NCBI GenBank assembly: GCA_965240325.2 | Contig: OZ251231.1 | Span: 1,178,001 to 1,242,000 of the forward strand | From: Rebecca billardiae RCC1528 | Lineage: Eukaryota > Protista > Haptophyta | Direction: 5' to 3' | Length of the DNA stretch: 64,000 bases | Part shown: positions 9,610 to 18,298 of the stretch, one piece after another | Position numbering within the stretch: the first letter of the stretch is position 1 | Layout of the letters: every line of letters begins with the position of its first letter | Notes under the pieces: model-generated | What the model was told of the DNA's origin: nothing | What the model saw: only the letters and a program-made list of their open reading frames with translations | The model's database searches: none | Position numbers and translations under genes: made by a program

Positions 9610-11250
9610 TCAGACGGTCTGCAACCCGACGATGCGCTCGCCGCTCAGCTGCTCGATGCGCCGAGCGGCGCGCACGGCGATGGCGTGATACCGCGCGACT
9701 TCGCCGTCGACGGCGACGACCTCGACGCCGTCGACCTCGGTGGTGGGTGCGGGGGACGCGTGCGCCGCGTGCGACTTGCGACCACCGCGGGCGAGCGCGA
9801 CGAGGCGCGCGACGGCAGCCCGGCCGGCCGGCGGCGCGGCGGCGCGCTCGTCCGCGAGCGCCTGCGCGTCGTTGGCCGCGAGCAGCGCGATCTCGAGCTG
9901 GATGATGGCCGCGTACTTGGAGATGGGTAGCACCTCGAGCGCGGTGAGGCGGCGGCGCGTCTCGCGCGCAGACTCGCTGTACCCGAGCACGGGAGCGATC
10001 GAGGAGATGAGCGCGTCCACGGCGCCGACGAGCGCGCGCGCGCCCGCGCTCGAGATCGCCTCGAGCCCGCCCGCGTCGCTCGGCGGGTCCGCCGACATCA
10101 CGCGCGCGTCGAAGGCGAGGCTGAAGGGCTCCTCGATCACGTGGCCAATCTCCTCGAGGCTGAAGAGGACGTACCCCATCCCCAGCTCGACGAGGGGCAC
10201 CATCGGCAGCGGGCAGTCGTGCAGCAGCACGAAGGGCAGCGTGAGCAGGAAGAGCGTGCAGAAGCGGCTCGTGTGCCGCGCGTACGACCACGGGATCGGC
10301 GTCTGCTTGAGCCGCTCGCACGCCGACGTCACGTGCACGAGCGCCTCGACGTGCCCCGAGAGCTCGGTCCACAGCGCGGCCTGCCGCTGGCCAGACGGGT
10401 CGTGCGCGCGCGACTCGGCCGAGCGCGGCGCGTCCGGCCAGAGGAGCGCGCCGATCTGCGAGCTCATCGCGGCGAGGGTGGAGGAGGGCATGTGCTGCGC
10501 GACCGAGACCGCGCGCAGCCGCCGCGCAGCCGCGTGCGCGCTTCGGTCCTCCCGCCACGGCTCGAGATACGACTCCCAGGTCTCGGCGAGCTCCGTGGCG
10601 TTGCGATTGCCGCGCAGGTGCTGCTTCAGCGCGACCGTGAACGTCGCCGCGTGCGCGAGGAGCGAGTCGCGCGCGGGGCCGGGCGGGAAGTGCGCGAGCA
10701 CGAGCATCGAGATCGAGCGCGACGCCGAGTGCGCGTCGGCCCACAGCTCACGCCCAGACCAGAAGCGATCGTGCGCCTGGTCGGTGCGGAAGACGAGGAG
10801 GATCGAGAGGAAGGACGCCACGGCCTCGTGCGGCCACGATGGCAGCGGCCCGATGTTCCAGAGCGCGTGCGATGCGAACGGCAGCTCGCGGTCCGCGGCG
10901 AAGAGCGCGGCGACGAGCACCGACCACACGGTGGTGCCGAAGAGGCGCTCGGCGATGTTGCGCAGCACGCGGCTCTTGCCGATGGCGAGCAGATCGCGCA
11001 GCCAGTTCGCGCGGCGGTCGCGCAGGTCCGGCGAGTTGAGCGGCAGGCCGCGGTCGTTGGTGGACGTCTCCCAAGTCCACGCGAGCTCCGGCTGCGGCCG
11101 CGGCGGCGGATCAGGCGGGAGCGCTGCCATGGCTGCATGGCCGCGCGCGTCCGCCGCGCGGCGCGCGCTGGGCGCGGCGCATCTAGGAGCGAGCTGCCGC
11201 GCAGACGGGTTCAGCGCGGCGCATGAAAGCAGCGCGACCAGCAGCCGCAT
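9610..11250 (-). CDS. Bestrophin-like anion channel (YneE/VCCN/BST type), probably plastid-targeted
   Basis: LLVFRTDQAHDRFWSGRELW, ACERLKQTPIPWSYARH and LEEIGHVIEEPF motifs. The likely start MRLLVALLSCAALNPSA looks like a signal peptide followed by an Arg/Ala-rich transit peptide. Confidence 0.9.
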   Translation of the reverse strand: MRLLVALLSCAALNPSARQLAPRCAAPSARRAADARGHAAMAALPPDPPPRPQPELAWTWETSTNDRGLPLNSPDLRDRRANWLRDLLAIGKSRVLRNIAERLFGTTVWSVLVAALFAADRELPFASHALWNIGPLPSWPHEAVASFLSILLVFRTDQAHDRFWSGRELWADAHSASRSISMLVLAHFPPGPARDSLLAHAATFTVALKQHLRGNRNATELAETWESYLEPWREDRSAHAAARRLRAVSVAQHMPSSTLAAMSSQIGALLWPDAPRSAESRAHDPSGQRQAALWTELSGHVEALVHVTSACERLKQTPIPWSYARHTSRFCTLFLLTLPFVLLHDCPLPMVPLVELGMGYVLFSLEEIGHVIEEPFSLAFDARVMSADPPSDAGGLEAISSAGARALVGAVDALISSIAPVLGYSESARETRRRLTALEVLPISKYAAIIQLEIALLAANDAQALADERAAAPPAGRAAVARLVALARGGRKSHAAHASPAPTTEVDGVEVVAVDGEVARYHAIAVRAARRIEQLSGERIVGLQTV

Positions 11251-12750
11251 CGGCCGCCCGGCGAGACCGCCCGCTGCGGTGGTCCGACCGCCGCACGACC
11301 GTCGTGTTTGTCGTGTCGGCGACGACTGGGGTCTGGCGCGGTTGACCTCAGCAGTAGCGCAGTGCCGCCTACCATACCTCTGCTGGTGTGAATTTGCTGA
11401 TGAAATTCGGGCCGGACCAGGGGCCGGACCGAGCGCTGCGCTGCACACCTGACACCACGCCTGATGGAGTGATGGGCGGCTACGAGGGGGGGGGAGGGGG
11501 TGGACGACGGCGAGGAGCGCTGATCCTGGTGTTTGTCCCTGCTGCTCGATCTGCTGCTACAGCTTGCTAACTCTGACGCCTGCCTGTGTTACCGTACCAC
11601 GTCGTAAATATATGTACATGGGGGAGATGATTTGTAATTCCTGAAAAAAATAAGCAGTTCACTATCTTATATCTATCCATCATCATAGTTACTGTCAGTC
11701 TACAGCGGGCTTCTGGGCTTGATGTCGCCGTCGGAGACTCGGAGCGGTGCGGCCGCGCAGGAGCAGTGCGTGCGCCGTTGTCAGAGTCGGATGACACCTG
11801 ACGGCGTGATTCTGCCGTGATGAAAAGCCGATTATTATGATGTGATGAAGTTACCCCGTGCGAAAAGTGACAATGCGTCGTCGAGTGGCGGTGTGGGTGT
11901 GTCGTGGCACAGACGTGCAGTCGGCAGTGGCGGACGACCGGACGCGACAATGGTCATCCGGTCAGTTCCGAGTTCGTCACTCCGAGCACAGTGGCATCAT
12001 GCATGGTGATGGAGGACTCGGCGGTCCGACACGGCCTACGGTGGCCCACTGTGACTGCAGTCTGACACTCAACAGTGCTTGTCCTAGATCGTCATAGCTG
12101 TGGTGCATTCCCCCTTGTGCAGTCGGCGGTCATGCCGTTGAGGCCAGTCCTGGACTACTCTCCCAAGTTTAATAGTACACCAGTGGCAACAGTCGCCTCG
12201 GGCCCGATCAGCTTACAGCGGCCTCGGCTCGGTCCTGCACGACAGTCTAGTCATCAGTCACCGGAGCTAGGAGGCTATACTCTGATTATTTGTCAGCGAG
12301 ATCGCCTGTGTGCAGGCAGAGAAGCTGGTGAGGGCACATGCGGTACCGCACTCCGCAGCGCACTGAGTGGGTACTTCCCGGCTAGCCCGAGCCAACTGCA
12401 CTCCGGGGCCGGCCACGAGTCCCCACCGCCGGAGAAGACCACTCGATCAGCGGACCAAGCCTTGGCGTCAATGACGCCGCCATTCGCCTTTGGTTGCCAC
12501 CCGTTACGAGGACGGTGGGATGGTCTGGTGAGTGGTGTCGCTTGGCGTGGCCAGCTCGAAAGCCTCACAGTCACACCGTCAACGCTCAGCAAGCTACTCG
12601 CCGGGCCTGGCACCATCTGTCTATCTCATCTGGTGTGTTCCAACTGAGGCTCTGGCCAAGTGGCCGTTGTGAGTGCTCATTTGCACCAAGGGAGACGGCT
12701 ATCTCCCGTGTTTGCACGCGGGCCAATGCACACCTACTACATTGTTGTCT

Positions 12751-13311: not shown

Positions 13312-13833
13312 GTTCATTGACCTGCCTGACGAACCCGCTTGGTGCATAGTCAACACCCGAGCGGCGGGCGAACCGACCAAAAGTGTACCCGGTCGCGGTA
13401 CGCACCGCTCCCGGCACTTGTATTTTCAATATTTTCACATACAAAAAGTGCGCTTCGGCCATCGGGAAAAGTTCTTGGATTCTTCATCAGTGCGTTGATG
13501 ACAGGTTTGGACCGGTCGGGAGGTGCAGAACTTGCCGATTGAAATCGAGGTAAATGCAACTTGAAATAGGTGCACGCGCCATTTCGCATCGGATGTGAGA
13601 ACATTGCTAACGGTCCGTCCGCTATTCTGCCAGTGGTAATCTCGGGTAGTTGGGTTGATTGCACCGTAGCAAAACAATAGGTGGCCAACCCGTTGGAGTG
13701 GTATCGGAGTAACGAGGGTTCAGGTGCACCTTCACGTCACGCATCTCCCCACGCAGGCCGAGAGAGCTTTGTACCCAGCAGGTCCTCACGGGGCACAAGC
13801 CACCACTTGACGGGCCCATCAAACCGCGGGCTG

Positions 13834-16800
13834 ATGAGTCCGCCGATGCGGCCAGGGAACCTCATCAACTCGCTGTACGACTCGCGGGCATCAAAGGTAT
13901 CGGCGCTGGACGTGCCCGACGTGGCGAAGCTGCTCGTGCTGGCCGCTTTCGCCGCGTATGTGTCGCTCGTCGGTGCCGTGTACATGGCGACGCGCGGGGA
14001 GTGGCAGCGGCTGATGCCGTCCGAGCGGATGGCAGCAGCTGCCAGCTCGGGCATGCTCCTCTCGAGCGTGGTGATACGGACAGTGGAGATTCTGGCGAAT
14101 CCCAAGTCCCACCGCACCGGCGCGAGCCACGTGGTGTGCGCGGTCAAGGGCATCGCCGGTGCGACCAACCTGATGTTCGCGCTGCTGCCGACGCCGCTTG
14201 TCATCGACGGGGTGACGCACTGCCGCGTGCACCTGCTGCGCTGGTGCGAGTGGACGGTGCTCGCGTTTGTCATGTCGTTCGTCGTGGAGGCGGTCGACTC
14301 GCAGTCCGTCCGGCAGCCGCTCATCTTTGCGATGACCATGGGCGTGAGCACGGCGTGCGGGATTCTCTTCCCGTTCCTCGGGACAGCGATGTGGACGCTG
14401 GCGATGGCCTTCTCGTTCGCGACGTACTTCTACGTGTTCGTGCGCGCCCGCGCCAAGTACAGAGCCCTGCCCGCGCCCCCCGACGGCTGGCCGCACGGCG
14501 GCACGCCGCGCGAGCGCGAGGCGTACCGCCGCTCGCGCACGGCGTGGCGGCTGATGGGCACGTGCGCCGTGATGTGGACGGTGTTCGTGCTGAACTACTT
14601 CATGGCGTGGATGGTGCAGCTGCGCGCGACGCGGCTGGGGCACGGCTACTCGCACTGGCCCTTCGTCGCCGACGCGTTCATCGACGTCTGCACCAAGCTC
14701 GCGTACGCGCTCGTGCTCGCCGAGGCGCAGGAGAGCGTGCCGACCATGTTCAACCTCGACTTCGCCGACTGGTTCCTCGCGCACATGAACATCGTGTGGA
14801 ACAACGTGTCCGACGTGATCGTGATCTCGTCGCGCGTCCCCGAGCCCTCGCGCAGCACCATCGAGACGATCGCGTGCTCGAGCCTCGGCGAGATGTTCGG
14901 CGGCGACGTGTGCGAGCTGTACGGCAGCGGGCACACGCACCGGCTGGTCGACGGCAGCCCGGAGGACCACGGCATCGGGCGCGACGTCGCGTTCGAGCGT
15001 ATCGTGTCGTGCGCGTGGCGCGCGTCGGTGGCCGGCGCGATGGTGCGGCACCTCGAGCCGCGCGGCGGCGAAGGCGGCAAGGAGTCGCCGCAGGCCACCG
15101 TGCAGGTCTGGCACGTGCCGCAGCCGGGCGGCGGCAAGCTGAGCTGCGAGGTGCACGCGTCCGCGCTCTCCGACGGCATGGCGGTCGTGATGGTGATGCG
15201 CGACATCAGCGACCGCGTCGCGCGGCACCTGGCGGAGAAGGCGCTGCTCGCCGAGACCGCGGAGAAGCGCATCATCGCGCAGAAGATCGGCCGCGAGAAG
15301 GACGAGGAGGCCAACCGCTTCACGCGGCACGAAGTGAAGAACGGCCTGCTCTCCGCACTCGGCGTGTGCAACACGCTCAAGGAGCTGCACGAGCACGGCG
15401 GCAAGATGGGCACGCTCGCGTCGGCGGAGTACGAGCGCACGTTCAACGGCCGGGTCGCCGCGCTCAGCGACACGCTGCAGCGCACGCTCGACACGGCGGT
15501 CGCGCACGCGATGGCGCGCGACGTGATGAACGGCGTGTACACGCCGCGGCCGGAGCCGACCGAGCTGCAGGAGCTGCTCATGCGCGGCGAGGGCGGCGAG
15601 GAGCGCTTCGCGTACGCCTTCTCGCCCAGCCCGTTCCCGCGGCTGGACCTCGACCCGCGGCTCGTCTTCCACGTGCACCGCAACGCCGTCTCGAACGCGG
15701 TCAAGTACGGCCTGCGCGGCGGCCGCGTCGCGACGCAGCTCGAGCACCAGAACGAGTGGATCACGATGCGCGTCATCAACGAGCCCGGCGCCAACCACGA
15801 CCGGCTGCTCGCGCTCAAGACGCCCGAGGTCGTGTTCGAGAAGGGCCGGCGGCTGACGACGCACGACCACCAGGGCGGCGCGAGCGCGCACGAGGGGCGC
15901 GTCTCCGCGGGCGACGGCGGCTGGATCATGGCCAAGTGCGCCGAGGCGCTCGGCGGCGAGTGCTCGATCCGCTTCGAGCCGCAGTGCACGGTGTTCACGC
16001 TGCGCTGCCCCGCGCCGCTGCACGTGTCCGACGAGGACGTGCTCCAGTTCCGCATGCCGGCGCACGCGCGCGCGATCGCCGTGGACGACTCGCCCGTGCA
16101 GCAGTGGACGCTCGTCTCGATGCTCGGCATCCTCGGCTTCCCGCCCGAGCGGATGCGCGTCGTCGGCGCGCAGGACGAGGAGATGGAGCAGTTCGCGGCG
16201 CTGTGCGCCGCCGAGGTCCAGGCGCACCCAGACGCGCTGTTCCTCATCATCGCGGACGACAACCTCGAGCTCTCGGACGGCGTGCACACCGTGTCGGGCA
16301 GCGCGCAGCTGCGCCGGCTGCGCGAGCGGCTGCGCGCGCCGGACGAGGCGCGGATCCTCACGATCACGCGCTCGGCCAACGACTCGGACGCGGACATCGC
16401 GCTCTACCTCAAGTGCGCGCACGCGTTCATCTCCAAGGACCCTCTCGTGCCCGAGAGCGTGCTGCGCGCCGTCGTGCCGCGCTGGGTGCACCGCTTTGGC
16501 GTGCAGTCGCGCGCGGCGCCCACGCCGTCGGGCGTGCCCAACGCGCAGCAGCTCGAGGAGCAGCTCATCAGCGAGATCCGGCTGCTGATCGATCGGATCG
16601 GCGGCGTGCCGGCGCACGAGTGGGGCCGCGTGCGTCCGCTGCTTCACCAGCTGAAGGGAAACGTGCGCTCGATGCCGGGCATGAGTGCGCCCGCGCGGCG
16701 CAAGATGGTGGCTGAGATCGAGGAGCTGCAGCACGCGACCGCGCGCCCGCCCAAGTTCGAGCAGGAGTGGGTCCTGCTGCGCGCCGAGCTGCACGCGCTC

Positions 16801-17644
16801 ATCGAGCGGCCGACGCTGCTGTACACGCACCGCACGGCGGGCACGCCGCCGTGCGCGCGGCGGCACGCGCTCGGCGCCGAGCAGGCCGCGCGCGCGGCGC
16901 CGAGCGGGCTGCGCTCGGCGAGCCCGGCGCCCGGCGCGCTGCCCGCACTGCTCGCGTCGCGCGTGCCCTCCGCCGGCCCGCCCGCGGCGGCGGAGGAGGA
17001 GCTCGAGAGCGTGGTCGAGTCGCTGGCCGAGGTGACGCTCTCGTCCCTCGCCAACAAGCCGATGCACAACGTGATCAAGATGCGCGCTGTCTTCTCGGGT
17101 ACGCCGCCTCCGCCACCGCCGCCGCCGCGCGCCGCCCGAGCGCGCGCCGCGGCCACCGCTGGCCCCCGCGCGCCCGCGCGCCGCCTGCCGCCGCTCACCG
17201 CACGTCCCGCGCGCGCCGTCCGCCGCGCCGCGCCGTGCAGACAACGCGCTCGTCATCTCCAAGGCGGTGCACGCGTTCCTGAGCTCGCACCGCACCACGC
17301 CCGAGACGCTGCACGAGAGACTGGCCGAGAACAACCTGGTCAAGCTGCACCGGCTCGCGCACCAGTGCAAGGGCTCCGCGGGGTACCTCGGCGCGGAGCG
17401 CGTGCACTCGCTCGCGCAGGAGCTGCAGGAGTGCCTCGAGAAGATGATTGACGACGACGGCTCCGACGGCGCGCAGCAGCGGATCCCGCCCGTCCTGCTG
17501 CGAGCGCAGGTGCGCGTGCTCAGCGACGAGGTCAAGGTCTTCGTCGCCGAGCTCGACCGGCTGGGCATCGCCGAGGAGGCGGTCGCTCGGCGCATGTGCG
17601 GCTCGGGCAGCAGCCATGATGACGCTGCGCCTGCGGCCGAATGA
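13834..17644 (+). CDS. Histidine-kinase rhodopsin: 8-TM microbial rhodopsin + PAS-like + HisKA + HATPase + receiver + two Hpt domains; exons 13834-17098 and 17241-17644
   Basis: Helix C LLRWCEW; helix G FIDVCTK (Lys at 14695-14697); H-box FTRHEVKNGL; N-box RNAVSNAVKYG; G boxes NEPG and AGDGG; receiver AVDDS...IIADDN...RSAN...ISKDP; Hpt motifs LHQLKG and LAHQCKGSAGYLGA. A GT-AG intron at 17099-17240 joins ORF 13681 to ORF 17267 in frame. Confidence 0.9.
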
Positions 17645-18298
17645 CGCTGTCCTCAGACCTCACTGGGTCTGTCTGAGCCGTTCGCGCCGCATTCGCCGTC
17701 CGAGCTCACAGTGGCAGCTGTCCGCGTTAATTAACCGGGCGGTAGCTTATCGACTATCACTACTCTTCTAGGCACTCACTGACAGAGTCTACATTAATAA
17801 TTAAGACAGCCGACTGTCAGCACTGCTCCGTATCTAATTATATAGCAGCAGCTTGTTTGCTTTTAAAGTAATCAGTTCCGCGAATTATTATTATTTTAAA
17901 AAACTATATTCTCTGTCGGTACTAGCAGCTACATCTAGCTACTCTGCTAACTCAGAATGAGAATCGACTCTGGCACTGTTAATGACAGCTTCGGTCTCCG
18001 GGACCGGGACGGACGCCGCAATACTACAGCGAGAGTACTATATACCCGATGACATACTACATAGTAGTAGCTTAGTCGTACGAAGATGAATAGTTATGAT
18101 TATTGATTGTGACTCGAGACTCAGTCTAAGCAGCAGTGCCGAGGTGCGACCCTTATTCATATTCAGTTTCGTCAAGCTAAAAGCTCCGACGGGCCGGGGC
18201 CGCGTTGCGCCTTGCGGCCTTGCGGGAGAAGCAAGAGAGGTTGCCACCACCCGTCCCAGAAAGCCCGTGTCGCCGTGAGCCCGTCGTCGGCTCAGCGG

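What the first reader, a model, noticed from the sequence alone, without database searches (positions are those of the whole stretch)
13834..17644. Self-contained light-sensing phosphorelay: 8-TM rhodopsin-HK-receiver-Hpt-Hpt
Seen: eight hydrophobic helices, the retinal-binding Lys (DVCTK), and complete H-box, N-box, receiver (DD, D, S, K) and two HxxKG Hpt motifs once one intron is removed. Known: chlorophyte histidine-kinase rhodopsins are Rh-HK-RR, often with a cyclase; His-Asp-His relays usually use one Hpt. Inference: this protein has no cyclase and instead ends in tandem Hpt domains, so it could pass a light signal to two different response regulators. I do not recognise this architecture as described.
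Basis: partly seen in the sequence, partly recalled or inferred. Interest (0 to 1): 0.85.

Follow-up and report, generated by a model that had tools for sequence, protein, structure and literature searches.

The report
Rhodopsin-kinase light sensor with two Hpt
An intact two-exon gene of a GC-rich haptophyte alga fuses an eight-helix, retinal-type light-sensor domain to a full histidine kinase, a receiver and two phosphotransfer domains, and it belongs to a large haptophyte and diatom family that domain databases miss; the second phosphotransfer domain is seen only in this gene.

Summary
Window 13834-17644 (+) encodes a 1222-aa protein from two exons, with an intron at 17099-17240.

**Rhodopsin domain.** The N-terminal domain models with high confidence (pLDDT 93) as an eight-helix type-1 rhodopsin. 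It matches rhodopsin phosphodiesterase at Z 23. The Schiff-base Lys (K288) and helix-C Arg (R136) are invariant in 57 relatives.

**Relay domains.** After the rhodopsin come:
- a PAS-like linker;
- a divergent but motif-complete histidine kinase (H499, N-box);
- a receiver (Z 15 to CheY; D751/D752, D808, S847, K868);
- a divergent four-helix Hpt-like domain (H938);
- after the intron, a canonical YPD1-type Hpt (Pfam E 8e-12; H1129).

**What is not unique.** The rhodopsin-HK-REC-Hpt chain is the standard architecture of a large family: 309 clusters at 50% identity, from haptophytes and diatoms. Pfam sees almost none of it, and I found no paper describing it. This scan has already reported three paralogues on other pieces of the same genome.

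**What is unique.** The second Hpt is absent from about 190 relatives examined and from the sister gene in Pavlovales sp. CCMP2436.

**Untested.** The splice rests on a codon-position GC frame switch, not on RNA. Retinal binding and phosphotransfer were not tested.

The parts
13834..17098 (+). Exon 1 (aa 1-1088 plus the first base of codon 1089)
   Evidence: Open frame with GC3 of 0.93-0.99. The first in-frame ATG is at 13834.
13915..14805 (+). Eight-helix type-1 rhodopsin domain (aa ~28-324: TM0 plus helices A-G and a cytoplasmic extension of helix G)
   Evidence: AF2 pLDDT 93.4. VIA Z 23.1 to Rh-PDE 7cj3/7d7q including TM0, and Z 19-21 to other rhodopsins. Foldseek E 5e-7. Family profile against the PDB: Rh-PDE E 1.3e-6.
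14236..14253 (+). Helix C motif LRWCEW (R136, E139, W140, equivalent to BR R82, D85, W86)
   Evidence: R is 57/57, E 53/57 and W 52/57 in relatives.
14683..14697 (+). Helix G motif DVCTK (D284 equivalent to BR D212; K288, the putative Schiff-base lysine, at codon 14695-14697)
   Evidence: K is 57/57 and D/E 55/57.
14806..15243 (+). PAS-like linker (aa ~325-470; W..SDV..IS ... RDISDR..AEK)
   Evidence: Conserved across the family. Only weak profile hits to the PAS of Brucella LOV-HK, E 0.38. Inferred, not shown.
15319..15339 (+). DHp H-box FTRHEVK (phospho-acceptor H499 at codon 15328-15330; HExxN motif)
   Evidence: R, H, E and N are invariant in 29 relatives.
15652..16014 (+). Catalytic ATP-binding domain (HATPase_c, aa 607-727). 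The N-box, F-box and GDG box are present. The G1 Asp is replaced by an invariant Asn (VINEPG).
   Evidence: Pfam E 8.1e-6, 26.7 bits against a cutoff of 26.4. Profile against the PDB: YycG E 1.5e-4 and 9m08 E 1.7e-3; 9m08 also has Asn at the G1 position.
16066..16497 (+). Receiver domain (aa ~745-888; D751, D752, D808 at codon 16255-16257, S847, K868)
   Evidence: AF2 pLDDT 88.7. VIA Z 15.0 to CheY 6tg7, rmsd 2.2 over 129 residues. Motif invariance.
16543..16806 (+). Hpt1: divergent four-helix Hpt-like domain (aa ~904-991; H938 at codon 16645-16647 in LLHQLKG)
   Evidence: Four helices are predicted, with the His on the second. REC plus tail matches bacterial REC-Hpt modules in the ESM Atlas, TM 0.63-0.67. 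Pfam Hpt is sub-threshold, 17.1 bits. The family motif is conserved.
16807..17098 (+). Ala/Pro-rich linker and the helix preceding Hpt2
   Evidence: Translation. GC3 is 0.98 in frame.
17099..17240 (+). Predicted intron (142 nt, GTACG...GCAG)
   Evidence: No codon periodicity (GC 0.89/0.94/0.85). The frame switches exactly across it. It is the only GT donor that fits the end of exon-1 periodicity. No RNA confirmation.
17241..17644 (+). Exon 2: canonical Hpt2 (H1129 at codon 17360-17362 in LAHQCKGSAGYLG), C-terminal tail and TGA stop
   Evidence: Pfam Hpt E 8.1e-12, 45.7 bits. Aligns to yeast YPD1 with His on His. There is no in-frame ATG between the upstream stop and the His.

Best explanation
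This is an intact nuclear gene for a light-regulated, multi-step His-Asp-His phosphorelay carried on one polypeptide.

**Proposed mechanism (all steps inferred).**
1. An eight-helix type-1 (enzymerhodopsin-like) rhodopsin domain binds retinal at K288. E139 and D284 are the likely counterions.
2. Light-driven movement of helix G and its cytoplasmic extension passes through a PAS-like linker to a HisKA-type dimerisation domain.
3. The kinase autophosphorylates H499. The divergent catalytic domain has an N-box, NxPG in place of DxGxG, an F-box and a GDG box.
4. The phosphoryl group moves to D808 of the fused receiver.
5. From there it moves to a histidine of a fused Hpt: H938 in the family-typical divergent Hpt1, H1129 in the canonical YPD1-type Hpt2, or both. 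Free response regulators take it from the Hpt.

**Shown here.** The gene structure, the folds, and the conservation of every catalytic residue.

**Inferred.** Retinal binding, the direction of light regulation (chlorophyte 2c-Cyclops are light-inhibited), and which Hpt is used.

**Evolution.** The single-Hpt chain is the ancestral state of a large haptophyte/diatom family. Hpt2 was added in this lineage on a separate 3' exon.
For: **Fold of the TM domain.** pLDDT 93.4. Z 23.1 to Rh-PDE including the extra N-terminal helix, Z 21.2 to bestrhodopsin, Z 19-20 to BR, SRII and xenorhodopsin. All of Foldseek's top 50 are microbial rhodopsins.

**Sequence of the TM domain.** The family profile hits Rh-PDE at E 1.3e-6, and ChRmine and bestrhodopsin more weakly. 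R136 and K288 are invariant. E139, W140, W248 and D284 are near-invariant in 57 relatives.

**Kinase.** HATPase_c at E 8e-6. H499, E500, N503, N621, N649, G652, F668 and G695 are invariant.

**Receiver.** Z 15.0 to CheY. DD, D, S and K are conserved.

**Hpt1.** A four-helix bundle with H938 on helix 2. The REC+tail model matches clusters in which 96-99% of members carry Pfam Hpt. The D. lutheri relative is named 'HPt domain-containing protein' by UniRef.

**Hpt2.** Pfam E 8e-12. Alignment to YPD1.

**Splice.** GC3 frame switch at 17098/17241, and a canonical GT-AG. No ATG is available for an independent Hpt gene.

**Family size and spread.** 309 clusters at E<=1e-3. Members come from Diacronema, Pavlovales sp., Chrysotila, Seminavis, Thalassiosira, Cyclotella and Cylindrotheca.
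Against: - No RNA evidence for the splice: no runs were listed, and no junction-spanning contig was found.
- Pfam and NCBIfam give no rhodopsin, HisKA or Response_reg hit.
- The G1-box Asp of GHKL kinases is an Asn here, and the kinase scores barely above Pfam's cutoff.
- Hpt1 is below Pfam's threshold. It is not significantly similar to Hpt2 by hhalign (E 0.23) or BLASTP.
- The Hpt1 His is replaced in 5 of 29 relatives.
- Some Hpt1 tails match DUF7032 better than Hpt.
- Helices C and F lack the prolines of BR.
- Retinal binding and photochemistry are untested.
Confidence: 0.65

Rival explanations
1. Only one of the two Hpt domains is a working phosphotransfer site. Hpt1 would be a structural or docking four-helix bundle, for example holding the receiver or the dimer. 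The newly fused canonical Hpt2 would be the real His-2. The relay is then a single linear His-Asp-His chain, not a branched one.
For: - Hpt1 is sub-threshold for Pfam, and only 7 of 28 relatives' tails hit Hpt at E<=0.1.
- Its His is replaced by L, Q, R, Q or F in 5 of 29 relatives.
- Hpt2 carries the full HxxKGSxxxxG signature and aligns to YPD1.
Against: - In this protein, and in 24 of 29 relatives, the HxLKG His is present, and K and G are (near-)invariant.
- The REC+tail model superposes on bona fide REC-Hpt modules.
- Most relatives have no other Hpt in the chain.
Confidence: 0.3
2. The mature protein has the family-typical single Hpt. The intron is not removed: translation reads through to the stop at 17449-17451, giving an Ala/Arg/Pro-rich tail. 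Alternatively, exon 2 belongs to another transcript or to an alternative isoform.
For: - The exon-1 frame stays open through the proposed intron to 17451.
- No RNA data exist.
- The sister gene in Pavlovales sp. CCMP2436 ends after Hpt1 and has no Hpt2 within 4 kb.
- No other relative has a second Hpt.
Against: - Codon-position GC shows that the exon-1 frame stops being coding at 17098, and that 17241-17641 is coding in the Hpt2 frame.
- That frame has an upstream stop and no ATG before the His, so it needs an upstream exon on the same strand.
- A canonical GT..AG pair restores the frame exactly at the periodicity break.
Confidence: 0.15
3. The membrane domain has a rhodopsin fold but is not a photoreceptor. 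It binds no retinal and senses something else, or is only an anchor. The protein would then be an ordinary membrane hybrid histidine kinase.
For: - No Pfam Bac_rhodopsin hit.
- Identity to solved rhodopsins is only 9-17%.
- The prolines of BR helices C and F are missing, and W189 is Tyr.
- The ESM Atlas feature search gave nothing.
Against: - The Schiff-base Lys and the helix-C Arg are invariant in 57 of 57 diverged relatives (about 25-35% identity).
- The carboxylates at the D85 and D212 positions, and the W86 and W182 equivalents, are kept in over 90%. That pattern is hard to explain without a retinal chromophore.
- The RW(Y)xEW helix-C motif is the one aligned to RYAEW of light-active Rh-PDE.
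Confidence: 0.1

Closest known systems
Histidine kinase rhodopsins / two-component cyclase opsins of green algae (Cr-HKR1/Cop5, Ot-HKR, Cr/Vc 2c-Cyclop1)
   Same: An eight-TM type-1 rhodopsin with cytosolic N-terminus, followed in one chain by a histidine kinase and a receiver. In 2c-Cyclop, phosphoryl transfer H->D is controlled by light (PMC6284317, read; PMC12558739).
   Different: - No cyclase.
- A PAS-like linker.
- One (family) or two (this gene) Hpt domains after the receiver. Ostreococcus is thought to use a separate Hpt protein (PMC12704426).
- The rhodopsin domain is invisible to Pfam.
- Found in haptophytes and diatoms rather than chlorophytes.
- Common ancestry with chlorophyte HKRs was not tested here.
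Rhodopsin phosphodiesterase of Salpingoeca rosetta (PDB 7cj3, 7d7q)
   Same: The best structural and sequence match of the membrane domain. It includes the extra N-terminal helix TM0, the R-Y/W-x-E-W helix-C motif and the D...K of helix G.
   Different: The output is a phosphodiesterase, not a two-component kinase. Identity is only 15-17%.
Bacterial unorthodox hybrid kinases with fused Hpt (ArcB, BarA, TorS type), and the rare eukaryotic HK-REC-Hpt fusions (Physarum, Albugo, multi-PAS HKs)
   Same: HK-REC-Hpt in one chain, giving an internal His-Asp-His relay. NCBIfam gives weak hits of Hpt2 to the TorS, BarA, ArcB and LuxU Hpt regions. The REC+Hpt1 model matches such bacterial modules. Eukaryotic cases are described as exceptional in PMC6324907.
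   Different: The sensor is a rhodopsin. There are two non-homologous Hpt domains in tandem. Hpt2 is of the eukaryotic YPD1/AHP type.
Paralogues in the same genome and the haptophyte/diatom family reported earlier by this scan
   Same: The same rhodopsin-PAS-like-HK-REC-Hpt chain and the same family. My searches reproduce this family reading independently.
   Different: Those reports describe one Hpt-like tail. This gene adds a second, canonical Hpt on a 3' exon.

Membership tests
Type-1 (microbial) rhodopsin, 8-TM enzymerhodopsin subtype | Seven-helix rhodopsin fold plus an N-terminal TM0 | tested here: met
   AF2 pLDDT 93.4 with eight helices. Z 23.1 to Rh-PDE over model residues 7-284, and Z 19-21 to more than 40 other rhodopsins.
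Type-1 (microbial) rhodopsin, 8-TM enzymerhodopsin subtype | Schiff-base lysine in the last helix, preceded by a carboxylate four residues upstream (D212/K216 of BR) | tested here: met
   D284 and K288. K is 57/57 and D/E 55/57 in relatives.
Type-1 (microbial) rhodopsin, 8-TM enzymerhodopsin subtype | Helix C with Arg, counterion and Trp (R82-D85-W86 of BR), and helix F Trp (W182) | tested here: met
   R136 57/57, E139 53/57, W140 52/57, W248 56/57.
Type-1 (microbial) rhodopsin, 8-TM enzymerhodopsin subtype | Recognised by the curated family model (Pfam Bac_rhodopsin) | tested here: not met
   No hit at E<=0.1 for this protein or for 10 relatives. A custom family profile does reach solved rhodopsins.
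Type-1 (microbial) rhodopsin, 8-TM enzymerhodopsin subtype | Covalent retinal and a photocycle | not testable with these tools
   Needs expression with retinal and spectroscopy.
Histidine kinase rhodopsin (Rh-HK-REC) | HisKA-type DHp with a phospho-acceptor His directly downstream of the rhodopsin | tested here: inconclusive
   The H-box FTRH499EVKN is invariant in 29 relatives, with an HExxN motif. Pfam HisKA does not hit, and a PAS-like segment of about 145 aa intervenes.
Histidine kinase rhodopsin (Rh-HK-REC) | GHKL catalytic domain with N, G1, F and G2 boxes | tested here: inconclusive
   HATPase_c scores 26.7 bits against a cutoff of 26.4. The N, F and G2 boxes are invariant. The G1 Asp is replaced by an invariant Asn.
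Histidine kinase rhodopsin (Rh-HK-REC) | CheY-like receiver with an acidic pair, phospho-Asp, Ser/Thr and Lys | tested here: met
   Z 15.0 to CheY. D751, D752, D808, S847 and K868 are conserved.
Histidine kinase rhodopsin (Rh-HK-REC) | Shared ancestry with the chlorophyte HKR1/Ot-HKR/2c-Cyclop clade | not tested
   No chlorophyte HKR sequence was returned by the searches, and no joint tree was built.
Hpt domain (PF01627): second domain, exon 2 | Match above Pfam's gathering score, and the HxxKG(S) His on the four-helix bundle | tested here: met
   45.7 bits against 24.6, E 8.1e-12. H1129 aligns to the YPD1 phospho-His.
Hpt domain (PF01627): first domain, aa 904-991 | Match above Pfam's gathering score, and the HxxKG His on the four-helix bundle | tested here: inconclusive
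   13.6-17.1 bits, below the cutoff. The HQLKG motif and the predicted four-helix bundle are present. The fold was supported only jointly with REC, in the Atlas search. It was not searched alone.

The most novel reading that the evidence does not exclude
Haptophytes and diatoms, two of the ocean's main phytoplankton groups, carry a large and so far undescribed class of enzymerhodopsins. In these, a cryptic eight-helix rhodopsin drives a complete His-Asp-His relay in one chain. In this gene the relay has gained a second, canonical Hpt through a 3' exon. One photoreceptor could then feed two phosphotransfer outlets, or a family-specific outlet and the cell's general Hpt pathway.
Probability: 0.4. 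Interest if true: 0.85.

Novelty: new variant of a known kind. Interest (0 to 1): 0.7.

Why it matters
Histidine kinase rhodopsins are known and studied only in green algae. There they end in a receiver or a cyclase.

Diatoms and haptophytes are not credited with such receptors in the reviews I could read. One open-ocean metatranscriptome survey reported no rhodopsin-histidine-kinase transcripts (PMC8017926). That is what one would expect if standard profiles miss this family.

If these proteins bind retinal, three things follow:
- A whole class of light sensors in major marine primary producers has been overlooked.
- The proteins would be compact optogenetic parts: light into a phosphorelay, with the Hpt outlet built in.
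- The two-Hpt variant found here gives a natural test of whether the divergent family Hpt or a canonical Hpt carries the signal.

Tried and rejected
- Direct Pfam and NCBIfam scans of the protein gave only HATPase_c and Hpt2. They could not settle the rhodopsin, receiver or Hpt1 claims.
- phmmer of the TM domain against the PDB was only suggestive, with Rh-PDE at E 0.08. The family profile was needed.
- The ESM Atlas feature search gave no usable hit.
- RNA evidence was sought three ways and not found: no RNA run was listed; a protein-guided scan of metagenome contigs for Hpt2 relatives found none; an exact search for the predicted exon-exon junction found none.
- A word-based search for stand-alone relatives of Hpt2 (73-233 aa) found none.
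- Hpt1 against Hpt2 was not significant by hhalign (E 0.23) or by BLASTP. I therefore rejected the idea that Hpt2 is a tandem duplicate of Hpt1.
- The profile of the linker region against the PDB gave only E 0.38 to a PAS domain. 'PAS-like' stays an inference.
- The VIA wide search of the REC+Hpt1 model was filled by receivers and did not test the Hpt1 bundle. Both structure-prediction jobs were then spent, so Hpt1 could not be folded alone.
- I considered an independent Hpt gene in exon 2. I rejected it because that frame has no ATG before the His.
- I listed other in-frame GT/GC...AG pairs. I rejected them because they delete periodic coding sequence or retain non-periodic sequence.
Full report
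**Gene model**

The + strand carries a 1256-codon ORF at 13681-17451 whose first ATG is at 13834. Downstream, in another frame, 17267-17644 encodes a Pfam Hpt domain (E 8.1e-12, 45.7 bits). Removing 17099-17240 (142 nt, GTACG...GCAG) joins the two frames. The product is 1222 aa and ends at the TGA at 17642-17644.

Codon-position composition supports this splice:
- GC at the third position is 0.93-0.99 in the exon-1 frame up to 17098.
- All three positions are equally GC-rich in 17099-17240 (0.89/0.94/0.85).
- From 17241 the third-position peak (0.97, 0.89) lies in the Hpt frame.

The Hpt frame has a stop upstream and no ATG before its conserved His. It therefore cannot be an independent unspliced gene. 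Of the in-frame GT/GC...AG pairs I listed, only 17099/17240 coincides with the break in periodicity.

I could get no RNA evidence. No RNA run was listed. Two scans of metagenome contigs, one protein-guided and one for the exact predicted junction, found nothing. First-reader notes elsewhere in this genome speak of GTGCG donors and GC-rich intron bodies. That fits GTACG and a CCG-rich body, but I did not test it.

**Membrane domain**

Pfam and NCBIfam see no rhodopsin. An exhaustive phmmer search with aa 1-372 found 309 cluster representatives at E<=1e-3, and 218 at E<=1e-10. An alignment of 57 of them (A1) has exactly two invariant columns: the Arg of LRWCEW and the Lys of DVCTK. I matched positions to bacteriorhodopsin (BR) numbering by motif. 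The census over the 57 relatives is:

| Residue here | BR equivalent | Conservation |
|---|---|---|
| R136 | R82 | 57/57 |
| E139 | D85 | 53/57 |
| W140 | W86 | 52/57 |
| W248 | W182 | 56/57 |
| D284 | D212 | D/E 55/57 |
| K288 | K216 | 57/57 |

The positions of BR T89 and D96 are Leu and Val. The BR prolines of helices C and F are absent. This agrees with the first-reader note on an 'E-L-V' motif.

The family profile hits solved rhodopsins and nothing else: Rh-PDE at E 1.3e-6, ChRmine at 4e-3 and bestrhodopsin at 0.019.

AlphaFold2 with A1 gives pLDDT 93.4 and pTM 0.88. The model has eight helices, a B-C beta-hairpin, and a long cytoplasmic extension of the last helix. Fold comparisons agree:
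- Foldseek's top 50 are all microbial rhodopsins.
- VIA-align gives Z 23.1 to Salpingoeca Rh-PDE (252 residues, rmsd 3.1), covering the extra N-terminal helix.
- It gives Z 21.2 to bestrhodopsin and Z 19-20 to BR, SRII, xenorhodopsin and others over the seven-helix core.

So the eight-helix rhodopsin claim is confirmed at the level of fold and pocket residues. Retinal binding itself is an inference.

**Cytoplasmic modules**

An alignment of 29 relatives from the H-box to the C-terminus (A2) shows these invariant residues:
- R498-H499-E500 and N503 (FTRHEVKN, a HisKA-type HExxN box);
- the N-box Asn (N621);
- N649 and G652 (VINEPG, in place of the usual DxGxG);
- F668 and G695 (GDG);
- D751 and D752;
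- N810 after the near-invariant D808;
- S847 and K868.

HATPase_c is just above Pfam's cutoff (26.7 against 26.4 bits). The profile reaches YycG (E 1.5e-4) and a second solved kinase, 9m08, which also has Asn at the G1 position. The kinase is therefore divergent but under strong constraint.

The stretch between helix G and the H-box (aa ~325-470) carries conserved W..SSDV..IS and RDI(S/T)(D/E)R..AEK motifs. It hits only the PAS of Brucella LOV-HK weakly, at E 0.38. I call it PAS-like by inference.

A second AlphaFold2 model (aa 734-1015, alignment A3) has pLDDT 88.7. It shows a (beta-alpha)5 receiver followed by four helices, with H938 on the second. The receiver matches CheY at Z 15.0, rmsd 2.2 over 129 residues.

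In the ESM Atlas, the best matches cover both parts of this model (224-238 residues aligned, TM 0.63-0.67). They are bacterial REC-Hpt modules whose clusters carry Pfam Hpt in 96-99% of members. Clusters without Hpt align only to the receiver. This supports Hpt1 as an Hpt-type bundle. However, Pfam scores it below threshold, I could not fold it alone, and five of 29 relatives lack the His.

Hpt2 is canonical. It aligns to yeast YPD1 with H1129 on the phospho-His and the KGSxxxxG signature intact. Hpt1 and Hpt2 are not detectably similar to each other, so Hpt2 is not a tandem duplicate.

**Family trait versus gene-specific trait**

Of 40 relatives with a complete receiver, 28 have a tail of 90 aa or more with the W..W..LHxLKG(D/N) motif. 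The rhodopsin-(PAS-like)-HK-REC-Hpt chain is therefore the family norm.

Named members come from these sources:
- Diacronema lutheri (KAG8462663.1, which UniRef calls 'HPt domain-containing protein');
- Pavlovales sp. CCMP2436;
- a Chrysotila/Pleurochrysis cluster;
- the diatoms Seminavis robusta, Thalassiosira sp., Cyclotella cryptica and Cylindrotheca fusiformis;
- many marine metagenome and MMETSP sequences.

All are annotated as hypothetical, or at most 'signal transduction histidine kinase'.

A quick maximum-likelihood tree places the window protein as sister to the Pavlovales sp. CCMP2436 protein (45% identity, SH-aLRT 94). Both sit inside a haptophyte-type clade that is separate from a large diatom-rich clade. 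That sister ends after Hpt1, and no Hpt2-like sequence lies within 4 kb downstream. The same is true of the D. lutheri locus and a metagenomic locus.

One relative (P0015) has an N-terminal Hpt. The second Hpt is thus specific to this gene or its close lineage.

**Literature**

The searchable library describes histidine kinase rhodopsins only as Rh-HK-REC, with or without a cyclase, and in green algae. The Hpt is a separate protein in Ostreococcus.

The survey of eukaryotic histidine kinases calls HK-REC-Hpt fusions exceptional in eukaryotes. It lists 'multi-TM' kinases of Micromonas and Guillardia as an undescribed group (PMC6324907).

No paper combining histidine kinase rhodopsin with haptophytes, diatoms or Hpt describes this family. 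An open-ocean metatranscriptome study reported no rhodopsin-HK transcripts (PMC8017926). The library lacks many subscription papers, so 'undescribed' is provisional.

**Earlier findings of this scan**

After I had reached the family reading, a look-up showed three follow-up reports on other pieces of this same genome. They describe paralogues with the same rhodopsin-HK-REC-Hpt reading and the same 'missed by domain searches, found in no paper' conclusion. This gene is therefore a further paralogue. Its new element is the second Hpt.

**Surroundings**

A 612-codon ORF on the minus strand (9610-11448) is a Bestrophin_2-family protein (E 7e-50). It lies head-to-head with this gene, about 2.4 kb away. 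tblastn found no second copy of any module of this gene in the window.

**Verdict**

It overstates uniqueness for the first Hpt, and its claim of two response regulators is unproven. The best reading is a light-regulated internal His-Asp-His relay of a new, cryptic enzymerhodopsin family. Here it carries an added canonical Hpt whose role (second outlet or the only working one) is open.

Noticed in passing
window 9610-11448 (-): A 612-codon ORF with a strong Pfam Bestrophin_2 match (E 7e-50). It lies head-to-head with the rhodopsin-kinase gene, about 2.4 kb between the starts. Rhodopsin-bestrophin fusions (bestrhodopsins) exist in marine algae. Here the two are only neighbours, and that may be chance.
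   Followed up: no
window 14806-15243 (+), aa ~325-470: A conserved PAS-like segment lies between the rhodopsin and the H-box (W..SSDV..IS at its start, RDISDR..AEK at its end). Its profile gives only weak PAS hits (E 0.38).
   Followed up: partly
window 15772-15789 (+), aa 647-652: In the ATP-binding domain, the G1-box Asp of GHKL kinases is an invariant Asn (VINxPG) across 29 family members. One solved histidine kinase (PDB 9m08) shows Asn at the aligned position too.
   Followed up: partly
Hpt1-like tails of relatives (alignment A4): Five of 28 family tails match Pfam DUF7032 (best E 6e-5), which is better than their match to Hpt. I did not look into what DUF7032 is.
   Followed up: no
P0015 (696 aa, Logan contig): One relative has a Pfam Hpt domain (E 1e-6) at its N-terminus, before the rhodopsin domain. 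The family has therefore recruited Hpt modules more than once.
   Followed up: no
window 17650-17900: Immediately after the stop codon, GC drops from about 0.73 to about 0.53. The sequence there has AT-rich palindromic bits (TTAATTAA, TTAATAATTAA), marking the 3' end of the gene.
   Followed up: no
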